A stretch of DNA of 64,000 nucleotides, from positions 186,001-250,000 of the IMG/VR virus record IMGVR_UViG_3300008261_000001; one strand, 5' to 3'. The notes beneath the pieces are model-generated. The model did not search any database. It was not told where the DNA came from and saw only the letters and a list, made by a program, of their open reading frames with translations. Shown here in pieces: positions 911 to 64,000 of this stretch. Each line of letters begins with the position of its first letter. Position 1 is the first letter of the stretch. A program made the translations under genes and the position numbers.

Positions 911-1384
911 TTATTGGATACTTTTAAGCAGATTGGCTATTTCTTGTTGCTGATTGGATAAGTCGTATGTGGGAACACCAAATGCTTTTGCGGCTAGAAG
1001 GCACGCCCTAATATCTTCATCTTGTTCGTTGTCACAGAGGTAGATTAAGAAATCTCTACCCTCGACTAAAGCTACATGGCGTAGCCGATTGGATATTTCA
1101 ATGCCGATCATTTTCTCGATGCCCTCGTAGATATTACACCCCACATCGAGTACCGAGTCCTTAAATGGAAAGTGGTTTTCACCTTTGGGTAGGTTTACTT
1201 TATCTTCGTGGGCTGTGTTTATTATTTGCTCGGCAGACGAGTCACCCCGTGTCCAAAGGATGTACCCCTTATTGGATAAGTAGGCACCGATGCGTTCTAG
1301 GCGTTGGGACAGCTTACTTTCCAATAGGGTGTGTAAGTTGGAAACGAAGGCGTATGTTTTCATGACAGTATGATTTCCACCCAT
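911..1384 (-). CDS. SLOG/DprA-like protein, divergent (start probably 1363)
   Basis: ERIGAYLSNKGYILWTRGDSSAEQ and AAKAFGVPTYDL resemble the SLOG fold pattern. Confidence 0.5.
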   Translation of the reverse strand: MGGNHTVMKTYAFVSNLHTLLESKLSQRLERIGAYLSNKGYILWTRGDSSAEQIINTAHEDKVNLPKGENHFPFKDSVLDVGCNIYEGIEKMIGIEISNRLRHVALVEGRDFLIYLCDNEQDEDIRACLLAAKAFGVPTYDLSNQQQEIANLLKSIQ

Positions 1385-1503
1385 ATGCAGAAGCAGAGGG
1401 CCATCTCTTCACTGTAATAGCATTCCCACATGGAAGCTCCTTTTGTCAGCTTATAGATTTCTAGGTACTTGTATAGTACGCTGTTGGTTAGATCTTCGAG
1501 CAT
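1360..1503 (-). CDS. small hypothetical protein (47 aa, not in ORF track)
   Basis: ATG at 1503; TGA overlaps the ATG at 1363 (ATGA coupling). Confidence 0.35.
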   Translation of the reverse strand: MLEDLTNSVLYKYLEIYKLTKGASMWECYYSEEMALCFCIWVEIILS

Positions 1504-63100: not shown

Positions 63101-64000
63101 GAACGGATCTACCTCTTACACGATTGGCTATCAAGTTAACAACATAAGGGACAGATGGTCTCACTTTGCCCTAAGCAGACACAATGGTACTTTGTACCTT
63201 TACCAAAATGGATACTCTTTATCCGCCACCAAGATAGACGATGCCTTCTCTCTCGCAGACTTCTCTACTGGCAGTAGCGGTAGCTTCTACATAGGCACAG
63301 ACAAAGCTCTAACATCAAACTACTTCTTTAATGGATACCTATCCAACTTTAGGTTGAGCGTGGGTATAGCGAGGCATACAACAGCGGACGCTCCATTTAC
63401 ACCCCCCACGAGTGTTTTCACCACGGATGTCTACACTAAGCTCTTGCTTACTGCGGATAGCCTAAGCGATCTTGGTACAGATACAAGTGGTTCATCTAAT
63501 ACTATGACTTTATCCAATGTAGAGTGGGAGAGTTTCTCAAAATCCTACGCGGATAAGTCTCTGAGTGTGGCGGTGCAGACGGGATCTTCTGTTTACGGTG
63601 CTTCTCAGTTCTTTGTCTATAGCTCTAACGATTACTACGCTAGACAAGCGAGGGGAAATAACTCGTACCCAACTCTTGTATCGAGCTTGCCTAGATATAA
63701 AGAGCTACCCACGAACGCTTTGGCTTACGAGGGCAACTATAAAGGGGCATATGAGCCTGCTTTGAGTGCTGGGTACTCCAATACCACACCCACCCAACCC
63801 GACTTGGTATTTAAGGCATTAGCGACTAGCACTAGAAACAATGTGGTCGAGGAATACAACTCTCCCTCTCAACCCACAGAGTACAAAATCTTCTCTCGGT
63901 TGAATAACGATGCGAGTCCTACTCCAGAGTTCAACATCGCCTTCCGATACAAAAATAACACATGGGGTAGCTATTACAATCTGTTCCCCTCCACAGGTGC
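57192..64000 (+). CDS. very large baseplate/tail-fibre protein, partial (not in ORF track)
   Basis: ATGA overlap at 57192; frame open where sampled and at window end; IKPAH motif, HxH motifs, (L/V)xDS repeats at about 60400-62150, two LamG-like domains (FRIEWW, GDFTIEW). Confidence 0.85.
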   Translation, partial: MSVYPYDPRFQKDPLGATTKSSSRRLLEDILSERIVSSLARSTASNYITESYGSNHRIFYEGVASLLSEILVDSVDNIDDSELSQLRAEFLSTRLLYSIFPPTNNSVPETDTIEELHKILILALESLFRGSTLESIKQALDSVYSEKVGLELEGYIVRLTSSILSITTIEDNHQHFVFTQSKGLGSTTYPIGLKWGDDLHSHLIVDGVVQPYTDAEGNTHTHEVSLGLIPNVVRLQENLRKVLSVIKPAHIKTGTISSVLEENGNLGVSEDEMILSLGGLYQDDMRRVRLGTWEDVLFGYASNKTLRVYRTNITKPNSLLVKPNENSSTGQRTRVLSISSSVPANGEYTSWSFPLDSASEALFRSTGVDTLSVDNGFITGKDSSDPSSEQIPAYFTDGSLVLLNGVAYYIELFLTEPPKYKVSAQVITTDTRLNATNSVVEITNLSSPWKVRQDIRYETYTFTYYPPAGSANLWFSLPPLNVRFFYKGIALNPTNSFSISINGVAVPSSVLKFYSHYDNNFYLLNAGDYSAVLNPLDRVTITYPYDEDEVYRFTSLNDPRLVLNATRKVGQVTTTNGRKSSYLAPSAPPYYIRRKNYVLNKVVPISPYTTEYRDATYGIGSTSTTNTITQKINSSFVLNRVSPSSKVASVSAPATKVITTKDGVISFVQLGFKPDYILSIFDGGGTEYIGALSKGYLRVAGITTPTTLTISALSTSPLTDSGTWYEGSKYLEGQAPLKKTEHSVSGLTESSADEIMANPLGLAEPQVGGGFKDAVRSVIARSSSTSIGTRGEPAFYEDRPTSFAVGGYLSEVHTETQYLDEVLYGDYSLYLLGPISTTELTTLTTIPTYLFFHYSFLSTFGGNGYYFSIYRISSDGIKYYQTLYPLADSGAFECFEEHPAPPNGAPLAYRWKDDGSGSGFSLNYPNGSFPTYEADPNGYFNHIPNQTYYVEVYMEQNGGIDELYFFSSGTNAPYTLGSSWTTSSETYALDDPMDMGFGKTYTFQVTFATNPGEVTSWLQIADPAPSATKSSEEVGATIEIIADVLSPSEPLYGERVSFIPNGGLFTPLGLPYSLDPVPAILDSVSIAETRNIQEFLPTTADTLSLSYLLSPCSITETTQAINDSFTYTYRVALADSLSVNDGSTQATQLILEDSLLLLDEIDHKLGLNFSDTSVVVDTIQASLDISLTLEDSVFVATNTVSTTYGFSPSISVESVPLPSDTLTTNLTLSRGVQDSLSEILDSVVLNLSGYDFSDVVQPADDQVAVLYAYAPTAVQDTLGGILDDVLFKYSVLEGDSVSPILDSVLTQVSEYLLLDSVTISDDVTLNYAYTSQALLDAVLALQDEVTHRVSSFNLTDSLTNILDEVGVLETRSISLLDSLSLTDSVSTSYVYGNINITESVASILDSVSTSYLFSALTLSDSVSAQVDAVQAYIKSLHISDQVGVTDEGSARISSFGVTDDLSITDVVGITVPVISVSDSTSLSDVGQAHISSIKTLDTLSWGDTIETSLSLTSLLVEDLVVLNDTVLTTYALNGLDLVDTVGFSDSDVEITPIVYVSDSVSAPTDETDTVQLFEPLEKSDSVVFSDGVLTSYVLLPSSVSESVPDVEDSTDLSLSLTSTLNEGAVSVLDTGLARISSKFLSDTLDMTDDVSTTYEESLRLVDGSIAFAGTDTSYLVGADISAFDTGTNAFRIEWWMYLDSTGAGNNPVVFSRNLRGTSDRFRVKLLNKTGLQLSLSTGSALVTNSFGSVANDEWVHIAIVGRSSVVRAYVNGVQLGSSWSTTYNITNASTAAFYIGNETTPIADTAFKGYITNLRYLYQISGASDLTTRTGTFSIPTAPLPSVSLNVFRLVATDSSTAFTGTGTTLTNTSSVSWSSSVPTITDPMSSLSLNGVISFPYANGYLSRLSDSDFNLGSGDFTIEWHQYLTTTELATSYSHRAYIFDLDYTAAIKQISVYYDSALEKIVLFYRVNGSTSYTIGYQVNNIRDRWSHFALSRHNGTLYLYQNGYSLSATKIDDAFSLADFSTGSSGSFYIGTDKALTSNYFFNGYLSNFRLSVGIARHTTADAPFTPPTSVFTTDVYTKLLLTADSLSDLGTDTSGSSNTMTLSNVEWESFSKSYADKSLSVAVQTGSSVYGASQFFVYSSNDYYARQARGNNSYPTLVSSLPRYKELPTNALAYEGNYKGAYEPALSAGYSNTTPTQPDLVFKALATSTRNNVVEEYNSPSQPTEYKIFSRLNNDASPTPEFNIAFRYKNNTWGSYYNLFPSTG

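What the first reader, a model, noticed from the sequence alone, without database searches (positions are those of the whole stretch)
914..63520. Heptamer TTGGATA/TATCCAA is strongly over-represented window-wide, on both strands and in several reading frames
Seen: by eye, 16 copies in the first 8.3 kb (914, 954, 1089, 1272, 2505, 2523, 3009, 3194, 3540, 3780, 5951, 6432, 7202, 7850, 7957, 8218), and it stays frequent across the window. A given 7-mer is expected about once per 8 kb on two strands at uniform composition. It is read as LD, LS, WI and IQ, so it is not one dipeptide bias. The TGGATA core also recurs in leader hairpins (37698-37730, 44030-44068). It resembles but is not the DnaA box TTATCCACA. 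Inference: a dispersed genome mark, such as a binding site for a condensing, packaging or segregation protein, a Chi/HIP1-like signal, or a modification target. In-window candidate readers are the Myb-repeat protein and the methyltransferase.
Basis: partly seen in the sequence, partly recalled or inferred. Interest (0 to 1): 0.75.

Follow-up and report, generated by a model that had tools for sequence, protein, structure and literature searches.

The report
Dispersed GGATA word in jumbo phage
A 290-kb freshwater jumbo phage carries about three times too many copies of the short DNA word GGATA (often as ATTGGATAA), spread evenly over both strands, all reading frames and the spacers; the excess is real, arose in one lineage, and nothing yet shows which protein reads it.

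Summary
TTGGATA occurs 103 times in the window, against 8.5 expected. The unit is not the heptamer, though. It is the pentamer GGATA/TATCC with graded flanks (consensus A-W-T-GGATA-A). The genome has 1780 copies, O/E 3.0, the top pentamer. ATTGGATAA occurs 37 times in the window against 0.5 expected.

The excess is a property of the DNA:
- It is found in all six frames, equally on sense and antisense strands, and is densest between genes.
- It survives synonymous, dicodon-preserving and restriction-avoidance-constrained shuffles.
- The word fills 28% of the positions where the protein allows it; codon usage predicts 12%.

The excess is also specific to one lineage. Relatives with 88% PolA identity share it. 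The 64% clade does not, although it shares the extreme restriction-site avoidance (ACGT and GCGC absent). Sites are conserved in position between relatives, and newly acquired genes carry fewer.

Spacing is Poisson-like and shows no polarity. That, plus the phage's own RecA, argues against a Chi-like signal. The Myb-repeat protein does not track the trait, and no methyltransferase family is specific to the rich clade. At least one unrelated phage, from hot springs, shows the same excess.

Best reading: a HIP1-like genomic word kept by weak, pervasive pressure, with an unidentified reader.

The parts
55..63555 (.). Dispersed GGATA/TATCC copies: 381 in the window (213 GGATA and 168 TATCC read on the + strand). 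Mean spacing genome-wide is about 163 bp.
   Evidence: Zero-order expectation for the window is 132.
914..63517 (.).
   Evidence: 103 against 8.5 +/- 3.1 in shuffles.
953..63518 (.). 37 copies of the full 9-mer ATTGGATAA, for example 953-961, 1271-1279, 3008-3016, 28518-28526 and 56830-56838.
   Evidence: 37 against 0.49 expected. Genome coding sequence: 137 against 10.8 by synonymous shuffle.
37698..37730 (.). Inverted repeat with 14-base arms ending in ATAATGGATA and a 5-base loop. It ends 8 bases upstream of the start of gene 36913-37689 (-).
   Evidence: It is not conserved at the orthologous G1 position.
44030..44068 (.). Inverted repeat with 12-base arms CTATAATGGATA and a 15-base loop. 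It lies just upstream of the ribosome-binding site of a small GIY-YIG gene.
9727..10191 (-). Three-repeat Myb/SANT-like DNA-binding protein (154 aa).
   Evidence: fold and family. (it does not track GGATA richness).
31753..32973 (+). It could not be tested.
20035..24626 (-). Block of genes shared with GGATA-rich G1 (72-86% identity) but absent from GGATA-poor G2: tail-fibre-like proteins and a SpoU methylase. This points to a different host range.
45836..46279 (-). M15 endolysin, 88% identical in G1 and absent from G2.
3468..6104 (-). Family A DNA polymerase, used as the marker for finding relatives.

Best explanation
GGATA, with weak flank preferences (A-W-T-GGATA-A), is a genome-wide recognition word. 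It is kept at high density by a weak but pervasive pressure on the double-stranded DNA itself, as HIP1 is in cyanobacteria. The most likely mechanism is that a sequence-specific protein which acts on duplex DNA regardless of orientation benefits the phage roughly in proportion to site density. That protein could be a binding protein or a modifying enzyme, encoded by the phage or the host.

Each site would then be under slight selection. Codon choice, spacer sequence and, to a small degree, amino-acid sequence are all bent towards the word.

Shown here: the DNA-level nature of the excess, its restriction to one lineage, its positional conservation, its partial occupancy and its graded, matrix-like flanks. 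Inferred: that the pressure is selection for a protein's sites.
For: - Enriched in all six frames (z 4.6-25.7), sense 804 against antisense 784, intergenic 7.8/kb against coding 6.0/kb.
- Survives the synonymous shuffle (1588 vs 706), the shuffle forbidden to create 53 avoided words (about 666) and the dicodon-preserving shuffle.
- Enrichment grows steadily with word length (2.2x to 12.7x), while truncated controls are flat.
- Trp-Ile is coded TGG-ATA 82% of the time in G0 and 76% in G1, against a 33% baseline. In G2 it is 16% against 17%.
- 28% of permissive positions are occupied in G0 and 32% in G1, against 12-14% expected. G2 has 9.6%. Orthologous proteins offer 13% more permissive positions in G0 than in G2.
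- G0 sites are conserved in G1 at 41.6% against a median of 16.6% for all 5-mers (rank 3 of 444), although third-position identity is only 42%.
- In G2 the same positions hold many different words, so all five positions converge on the word; it is not one mutation type.
- O/E falls from 2.32 in core genes to 1.58 in genes unique to G0.
- Unrelated phage records G4 and G11 show the same all-frame excess and the same favoured flanks.
- Xu et al. 2018 (PMC5861425) used positional conservation in the same way to argue that HIP1 is kept by selection.
Against: - No reader was identified. The Myb protein and the methyltransferases give no discriminating signal.
- Positional conservation at near-saturated divergence could also arise if both lineages converge independently under a neutral drive.
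- Two strain-level tests had no power: 0 of 40 variants in motifs against 1.4 expected, and 16 of 22 sites conserved against 63.5% overall.
- The recurrence in other phages came from a GGATA-based search. The reversed-word control gave 0 of 111 against 3 of 192, which is only suggestive.
- Gene calls are simple ORF calls, so the 'intergenic' class may contain small genes.
Confidence: 0.45

Rival explanations
1. Neutral molecular drive. A sequence-specific repair or gene-conversion process converts near-cognate words into GGATA without any benefit to the phage. Precedents are Vsr/Dcm very-short-patch repair in E. coli and the repair model proposed for HIP1 (Elhai 2015, PMC4390886). Here it could be a methyltransferase paired with a mismatch nuclease.
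For: - The excess is strand-symmetric, frame-independent and strongest in spacers.
- It increases with a gene's residence time in the lineage.
- Occupancy is partial, like a mutation-drift equilibrium.
- Many PF01555 methyltransferases are present.
- One natural strain variant turns GAATA into GGATA.
Against: - No one-mismatch neighbour is specifically depleted as a donor.
- Aligned G2 positions show changes at all five positions, both transitions and transversions. A single mismatch-specific enzyme such as Vsr would not produce this.
- I did not search for a Vsr-like gene.
Confidence: 0.25
2. The word is the target of one of the phage's (or host's) DNA methyltransferases. High density serves an epigenetic or protective purpose. 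This is a specific version of the best explanation.
For: - There are eight PF01555-like genes in G0, including window 31753-32973.
- Type III Mod-like enzymes, which belong to the PF01555 family (own knowledge), recognise asymmetric 5-6 bp words.
- G4, G12 and G13 also carry PF01555 genes.
Against: - All methyltransferase families are shared with GGATA-poor G2 at 52-88% identity.
- G11 shows none in 31 kb.
- The family is common in phages.
- No solved relative hints at a specificity.
- Known modification targets are not generally enriched in genomes.
Confidence: 0.15
3. Chi-like signal. The word attenuates the host's RecBCD/AddAB-type nuclease and so protects the phage DNA or recruits recombination to it.
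For: - The trait tracks a clade with its own tail-fibre and endolysin genes, so probably a different host.
- Chi enrichment in phages is documented (PMC3784561, PMC12315714).
- A 5-base Chi is known in Bacillus (own knowledge).
Against: - There is no orientation switch or polarity; 953 against 827 copies, uniform along the genome.
- G0 encodes its own RecA/UvsX, whereas Chi-rich lambdoid phages lack a recombination module (PMC12315714).
- No GGATA-rich bacterium appeared in the partial genome scan.
- The other GGATA-rich phage lives in hot-spring mats, not lakes.
Confidence: 0.08
4. Dispersed binding sites of the in-window three-repeat Myb-like protein.
For: - It is a real multi-repeat Myb fold and matches PHROG 323, 'transcriptional regulator, D5-like'.
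- Plant single-repeat MYB proteins bind GGATA/TATCCA (own knowledge; the elements are named in PMC12586236).
- The protein evolves fast: 53% G0-G1 identity against a 68% mean.
Against: - Homologues are present in GGATA-poor G2 and L052. L052's is 72% identical, with near-identical third helices.
- It is absent from G4, G11 and G12.
- Its recognition helices are of the generic c-Myb type and lack the SHAQKYF motif (my reading).
- The complex predictor does not score protein-DNA pairs.
Confidence: 0.05
5. By-product of coding constraints or of the extreme restriction-site avoidance, with no signal of its own.
For: - The genome avoids many words completely.
- This does create compensatory excesses, such as GAGCTT/AAGCTC.
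Against: - A shuffle constrained not to create avoided words gives about 666 copies against 1588 observed.
- The 64% clade shares the avoidance but not the GGATA excess.
- Spacers are the richest compartment.
- The excess survives the dicodon shuffle.
Confidence: 0.02

Closest known systems
HIP1 (GCGATCGC) of cyanobacterial genomes
   Same: - A short word hugely over-represented genome-wide, inside and between genes.
- Independent of reading frame.
- Conserved in position between related genomes.
- Function still debated between selection and biased repair (PMC5861425, PMC4390886).
   Different: - HIP1 is an 8-base palindrome, 15-300x over-represented, in cellular genomes, tied to the methyltransferases DmtA and DmtC, and periodic at 10-90 kb.
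- Here the word is an asymmetric 5-base core, 2-3x over (13x for the 9-mer), in a phage.
- No linked methyltransferase is known and the spacing is Poisson-like.
- This phage has no HIP1 at all (CGATCG count is 0).
Chi sites enriched in phages that rely on host RecBCD (PMC12315714, PMC3784561)
   Same: A short asymmetric host-read word enriched in some phage lineages and not in their relatives.
   Different: - Chi acts in one orientation, and in phage LLS the sites cluster at the genome ends.
- Chi-rich phages lack their own recombinase.
- Here the word has no polarity, is evenly spread, and the phage has RecA/UvsX.
DNA uptake sequences (DUS/USS) of Neisseria and Pasteurellaceae (own knowledge)
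   Same: Many copies on both strands, evenly spread, inside genes in all frames, with a graded core-plus-flank consensus. Possibly maintained by a molecular drive.
   Different: Those are 9-12 bases long, in competent bacteria, and driven by uptake bias. No analogous uptake step is known for a phage.
Word biases caused by Dcm/Vsr very-short-patch repair in E. coli (own knowledge)
   Same: Strand-symmetric, frame-independent shifts in the abundance of short words, produced by a DNA-level process.
   Different: Vsr acts on T:G mismatches at one position and depletes specific donor words. Here all five positions converge and no donor word is depleted.
Restriction-site avoidance in phages
   Same: Present in extreme form in the same genome: ACGT and GCGC are absent, and 23 of 64 six-base palindromes are absent.
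   Different: That is depletion, and it is shared with the GGATA-poor clade. The GGATA excess is a separate, later, positive signal.

Membership tests
HIP1-like selected genomic word | Over-representation beyond what codon and amino-acid usage predicts, inside and between genes | tested here: met
HIP1-like selected genomic word | Sites conserved in position between related genomes more than other words | tested here: met
   41.6% against a median of 16.6%, rank 3 of 444. Independent convergence could mimic this.
HIP1-like selected genomic word | Palindromic word recognised by cognate orphan methyltransferases | tested here: not met
   GGATA is not a palindrome. No methyltransferase family is specific to the rich clade. 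Methylation itself was not testable.
HIP1-like selected genomic word | Periodic long-range spacing | tested here: not met
   Gaps fit an exponential distribution, with no short-range periodicity and even 10-kb bins. A 290-kb genome is too small to test 10-90 kb periods well.
Chi-like recombination or nuclease-control site | Orientation polarity relative to DNA ends or replication | tested here: not met
   953 against 827 copies, with no switch along the genome. Sense 804 against antisense 784.
Chi-like recombination or nuclease-control site | Phage lacks its own recombination module (the rule for Chi-rich lambdoid phages, PMC12315714) | tested here: not met
   RecA/UvsX at G0:101831-102691, 145 bits. 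It is also present in GGATA-poor G2 and G3.
Chi-like recombination or nuclease-control site | The same word is enriched and skewed in the host genome | tested here: inconclusive
   The host is unknown. The partial scan of bacterial genomes found none that is rich in the word.
DnaA box | The 9-mer TTATCCACA, or TTWTNCACA | tested here: not met
   13 of 860 TTATCC continue with ACA; the favoured continuation is AAT. TATCCAC is only 1.4x over.
Promoter, operator or terminator motif | Positional and strand bias relative to genes | tested here: not met
   The profile around starts and stops is nearly flat. 89% of copies are inside genes on either strand. Only 4 long inverted repeats exist.
Binding sites of the Myb-repeat protein | The protein co-occurs with the word excess across genomes | tested here: not met
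Compensation for restriction-site avoidance | The excess is reproduced when shuffles are forbidden to create avoided words | tested here: not met
   About 666 copies against 1588 observed.
DNA modification target | Modified base at the word in virion DNA | not testable with these tools
   Only assembled contigs were available, with no kinetic or signal-level reads.

The most novel reading that the evidence does not exclude
GGATA is a previously unrecognised kind of phage 'self' word. Unrelated phages from different habitats (a lake jumbo phage and a hot-spring-mat phage) acquired it convergently, because a widespread, still unknown system reads it on duplex DNA. That system could be a host nuclease or defence sensor that spares word-dense DNA. 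Alternatively, the replication or repair machinery could drive the word, for example through retained fixed-sequence primers.
Probability: 0.2. Interest if true: 0.85.

Novelty: new variant of a known kind. Interest (0 to 1): 0.62.

Why it matters
Genome-wide over-represented words (Chi, KOPS, DUS/USS, HIP1) have each led to a piece of DNA-handling machinery. Almost all known cases are in cellular genomes.

This case is in a widespread freshwater jumbo phage, and it offers three advantages for study:
- A built-in natural control: sister phages with the same gene order and the same restriction avoidance but without the word. This shows the trait can switch on within a lineage.
- A signal strong enough to bend codon choice at thousands of positions.
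- An apparent recurrence in an unrelated phage.

The word also offers a simple sequence signature for grouping uncultured phages.

Tried and rejected
1. Heptamer as the unit. Maximal-order Markov analysis puts the signal at k=5, and extension analysis shows graded flanks.
2. Codon, dipeptide or dicodon artefact: rejected.
3. Compensation for restriction avoidance: rejected.
4. One-step conversion from a depleted neighbour (GAAT is rare, so GAATA to GGATA was suspected). GAATA is at 0.88 and no donor stands out.
5. A switch from GATC enrichment in the 64% clade to GGATA. GATC is not an outlier against synonymous shuffles in G2, so I dropped this.
6. DnaA box: rejected.
7. Myb protein as a clade marker. 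The HMM search suggested it was absent from G2, but tblastn and a custom HMM found it there. That was a false negative, now corrected.
8. Complex prediction of the Myb protein with a natural 33-bp site. The tool does not score protein-DNA pairs, so this gives no evidence.
9. Long hairpins as conserved operators. They are not conserved at the orthologous G1 position, and only 4 exist.
10. Strain-level selection tests (read laying on 6 kb; the 90%-identical contig L049). Both were underpowered.
11. Host search. There is no psbA. Sequencing runs are all metagenomes.
12. Shared driver gene among GGATA-rich phages: none found.
13. Literature search for the word in phages: nothing found.
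Full report
WHAT THE WINDOW IS. The window is bases 186001-250000 of a single 290,179-bp contig with 47.3% GC. It is an IMG/VR virus record estimated 93% complete. It encodes a family A DNA polymerase, a Baseplate J protein and nine tRNAs, so it is a jumbo tailed phage. 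Near-identical sequence occurs in about twenty lake, drinking-water and other freshwater metagenomes. The nearest GenBank record is an uncultured 485-kb phage with 47% PolA identity.

THE OBSERVATION. TTGGATA/TATCCAA occurs 103 times in the window, against 8.5 +/- 3.1 in dinucleotide shuffles. All listed positions are right, and one at 5065 was missed. Genome-wide there are 452 copies, 233 on one strand and 219 on the other.

THE UNIT IS GGATA. Maximal-order Markov analysis places the anomaly at k=5. GGATA/TATCC has 1780 copies against 1131 expected (z 19), and nothing extra appears at k=7. At zero order it is the top pentamer, with O/E 3.0. After GGAT the next base is A in 57% of cases: 1780 against 320 C, 476 G and 539 T.

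Against within-gene synonymous shuffles, the enrichment grows with the length of the word:
- GGATA 2.2x
- TGGATA 3.0x
- TTGGATA 5.2x
- ATTGGATA 9.7x
- ATTGGATAA 12.7x (137 against 10.8)

Truncated controls that lack the core are flat, at 0.9-1.4x. Each flank position carries only 0.1-0.2 bits. The near-absence of C at position -2 follows from a separate avoidance of CNGG words.

IT IS A DNA-LEVEL SIGNAL.
- With 291 simple ORF calls covering 91% of the genome, GGATA is enriched in all six frames (z 4.6 to 25.7).
- It is equally frequent on sense (804) and antisense (784) strands.
- It is denser between genes (7.8/kb) than within them (6.0/kb).
- It survives a dicodon-preserving Euler shuffle. 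The pentamer gives 1588 against 1257 (z 25.6), the heptamer 414 against 208 (z 17.6) and the 9-mer 137 against 28 (z 24.6). In the window's genes alone the heptamer gives 83 against 40 (z 8.3).

IT IS NOT THE FLIP SIDE OF RESTRICTION AVOIDANCE. The genome avoids restriction sites to an extreme degree. ACGT and GCGC are both at 0 copies, CCGG, GGCC and AATT are 16-25-fold depleted, and 23 of 64 six-base palindromes are absent. GGATA then fell to about 666, against 1588 observed. The same procedure did partly explain another excess, GAGCTT/AAGCTC.

ANATOMY ALONG THE GENOME. Copies are spread evenly, at 45-75 per 10 kb. Gaps follow an exponential distribution, with no periodicity and no clustering. 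There is no switch of orientation, only a mild overall strand excess of 953 against 827. The profile around gene starts and stops is almost flat. Only four inverted repeats with arms of 10 bases or more exist, two of them in the window at 37698-37730 and 44030-44068. The one tested, 37698-37730, is not conserved at the orthologous position in the closest relative. These hairpins are therefore a small side class and not the main phenomenon.

COMPARATIVE EVIDENCE. PolA-based searches found three sets of relatives: contigs of the same phage, a clade at 88% identity, and a clade at 64%.
- The 88% clade (G1, 110 kb) has GGATA at O/E 3.6, rank 1.
- The 64% clade (G2, complete at 376 kb, plus six other contigs) has O/E 0.6-0.9, although ACGT and GCGC are absent there too.

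The excess is therefore a later gain in one lineage, independent of the avoidance.

In codon alignments of 58 G0-G1 orthologues, 41.6% of G0's GGATA sites are GGATA in G1. The median for all 5-mers is 16.6%, which puts GGATA at rank 3 of 444, level with Met-containing words. Third-position identity in the same alignments is only 42%. In 141 G0-G2 orthologues the same positions hold many different words in G2 (GGGTA, TGATA, GGATC, AGACA and others). So all five positions have converged, by transitions and transversions alike, and no one-mismatch neighbour is depleted as a donor.

Context-dependent codon choice is plain. Trp-Ile is TGG-ATA in 82% of cases in G0 and 76% in G1, against an Ile-ATA share of about 33%. 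In G2 it is 16% against 17%.

Of all positions where the protein allows the word by synonymous choice, the word occupies:
- 28.3% in G0 (11.9% expected)
- 32.3% in G1 (13.8% expected)
- 9.6% in G2 (11.2% expected)

Orthologous proteins also offer 13% more such positions in G0 than in G2. Finally, O/E falls from 2.32 in core genes, to 2.05 in genes shared only with G1, to 1.58 in genes unique to G0. This is what a continuing process would do to genes that arrived more recently.

CANDIDATE READERS. The Myb-repeat protein (window 9727-10191, minus strand) is real. It has three Myb/SANT repeats and a Pfam Myb domain above threshold. It matches PHROG 323. Its model is three three-helix bundles whose best structural matches are SNAPc, Cdc5 and c-Myb R1R2R3.

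An HMM search first suggested it was confined to the GGATA-rich clade. That was a false negative. G2 has a homologue (custom HMM E 6e-24). A contig encoding a 72%-identical protein with near-identical third helices is GGATA-poor, at O/E 0.87. The other GGATA-rich records have none. So the distribution argues against it as the driver.

The genome has eight PF01555-like methyltransferase genes. All have homologues of similar identity in G2, and the in-window one has no solved relative. Nothing discriminates between them, and methylation could not be examined.

What does distinguish the rich clade is a block of tail-fibre-like genes, a SpoU methylase and an M15 endolysin. That points to a different host.

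CHI-LIKE READING. Chi enrichment in phages is documented, and it goes with the absence of a phage recombination module (PMC12315714, PMC3784561). G0, like G2 and G3, encodes a RecA/UvsX homologue, and the word shows no polarity. It found no genome rich in the word. The best candidates have TTGGATAA at 0.08/kb or less, against 0.86/kb in the phage.

RECURRENCE ELSEWHERE. They returned G1 and several unrelated records.
- G4 (19 kb, 35.6% GC, no ACGT/GCGC avoidance): GGATA is the top pentamer against synonymous shuffles (145 vs 62, z 16). It lies on both strands, in several frames and in spacers, and ATTGGATAA is the favourite 9-mer.
- G11 (31 kb, 35.2% GC): similar (150 vs 75, z 14).
- G12 and L227: weak cases.

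These records share no protein with G0 or G1, except weak PolA and methyltransferase hits and one further G4 protein, each matched about as well in G2. G4 has its own DnaB/DnaG-type replication genes and comes from hot-spring and mat metagenomes, with no sample in common with G0.

Three caveats apply. The contigs were found by searching for the word. G4 and G11 could be fragments of one lineage. A control scan with the reversed word gave 0 of 111 comparable loci, against 3 of 192, which is suggestive only.

Among 172 sampled viral loci, other 'exceptional' pentamers were almost all coding repeats that vanish under synonymous shuffles. The only other DNA-level case was TGCAA in L429. So the G0-type signal is uncommon.

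CONCLUSION.

I favour a HIP1-like interpretation (confidence 0.45): the word is kept by weak, pervasive selection for sites of an unidentified protein that acts on duplex DNA without regard to orientation. A neutral repair or conversion drive (0.25) cannot be excluded with the data at hand. A methylation target (0.15) is a testable special case of the favoured reading. The remaining readings are unlikely or rejected: Chi-like (0.08), Myb operator (0.05) and artefact (0.02).

Noticed in passing
whole window and genome (for example, no ACGT or GCGC anywhere in 1-64000): Restriction-site avoidance is extreme. ACGT and GCGC have 0 copies in 290 kb, and CCGG, GGCC and AATT have 33, 48 and 87. Of the 64 six-base palindromes, 23 are absent. 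Non-palindromic words such as GCAGC, GAATGC, CGACG and CCAAGG are also depleted. This suggests a host very rich in restriction systems. The 64% clade shares the trait.
   Followed up: partly
G0:95830-100637, window 31753-32973, G0:273249-274460, G0:276904-278124: There are arrays of PF01555-like methyltransferase paralogues: four of about 190 aa and one of 260 aa in tandem, plus three of about 405 aa that are 45-55% identical to each other. G2 and G3 have similar arrays. The phage combines many orphan methylases with site avoidance.
   Followed up: partly
window 43735-44019 (-): A small stand-alone GIY-YIG nuclease gene (Pfam 58 bits, also T5orf172) lies immediately behind the 12-base-arm inverted repeat at 44030-44068. 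Its ribosome-binding site abuts the repeat.
   Followed up: partly
window 33846-35186 (-): This protein has a DUF7487 domain (E 4e-43) and a sub-threshold CP12-like stretch. It is a possible hint of a cyanobacterial host, but no psbA is present in any of the related phages.
   Followed up: no
window 20035-24626 and 45836-46279: A block specific to the GGATA-rich clade holds tail-fibre-like proteins, a SpoU-type RNA methylase and an M15 endolysin. It is 72-88% identical in G1 and absent from G2, so it is a likely host-range module.
   Followed up: partly
G001 (L021-L026): The 88% relative additionally avoids CASTG completely (CACTG 0, ACTGG 1), and CCAG is at 0.14. G0 avoids these only mildly. 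The avoidance repertoires therefore differ between close relatives.
   Followed up: no
L429 (IMGVR_UViG_3300021959_000266): An unrelated viral contig has a two-strand, two-frame excess of TGCAA, part of the palindrome TTGCAA. It is 1.9x over synonymous shuffles (z 9) and is another DNA-level exceptional word.
   Followed up: no
L238: This viral contig has 258 copies of CAAGG on one strand, in two frames, within 8 kb. It is a coding repeat (synonymous O/E 1.04) and an example of an 'exceptional word' that is not a DNA-level signal.
   Followed up: partly
G0:92148-92468: Two more long inverted repeats of the A-W-AATGGATA type, with 10-base arms, lie 160 bases apart inside a doubtful small ORF. 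This may be a regulatory spacer.
   Followed up: no
window 10554-11282: A cluster of five tRNA genes (Arg-CCT, Asn, Leu-TAA, Leu-GAG, Met) lies next to the Myb-repeat gene. One TTGGATA copy, at 10569, lies inside tRNA-Arg.
   Followed up: no
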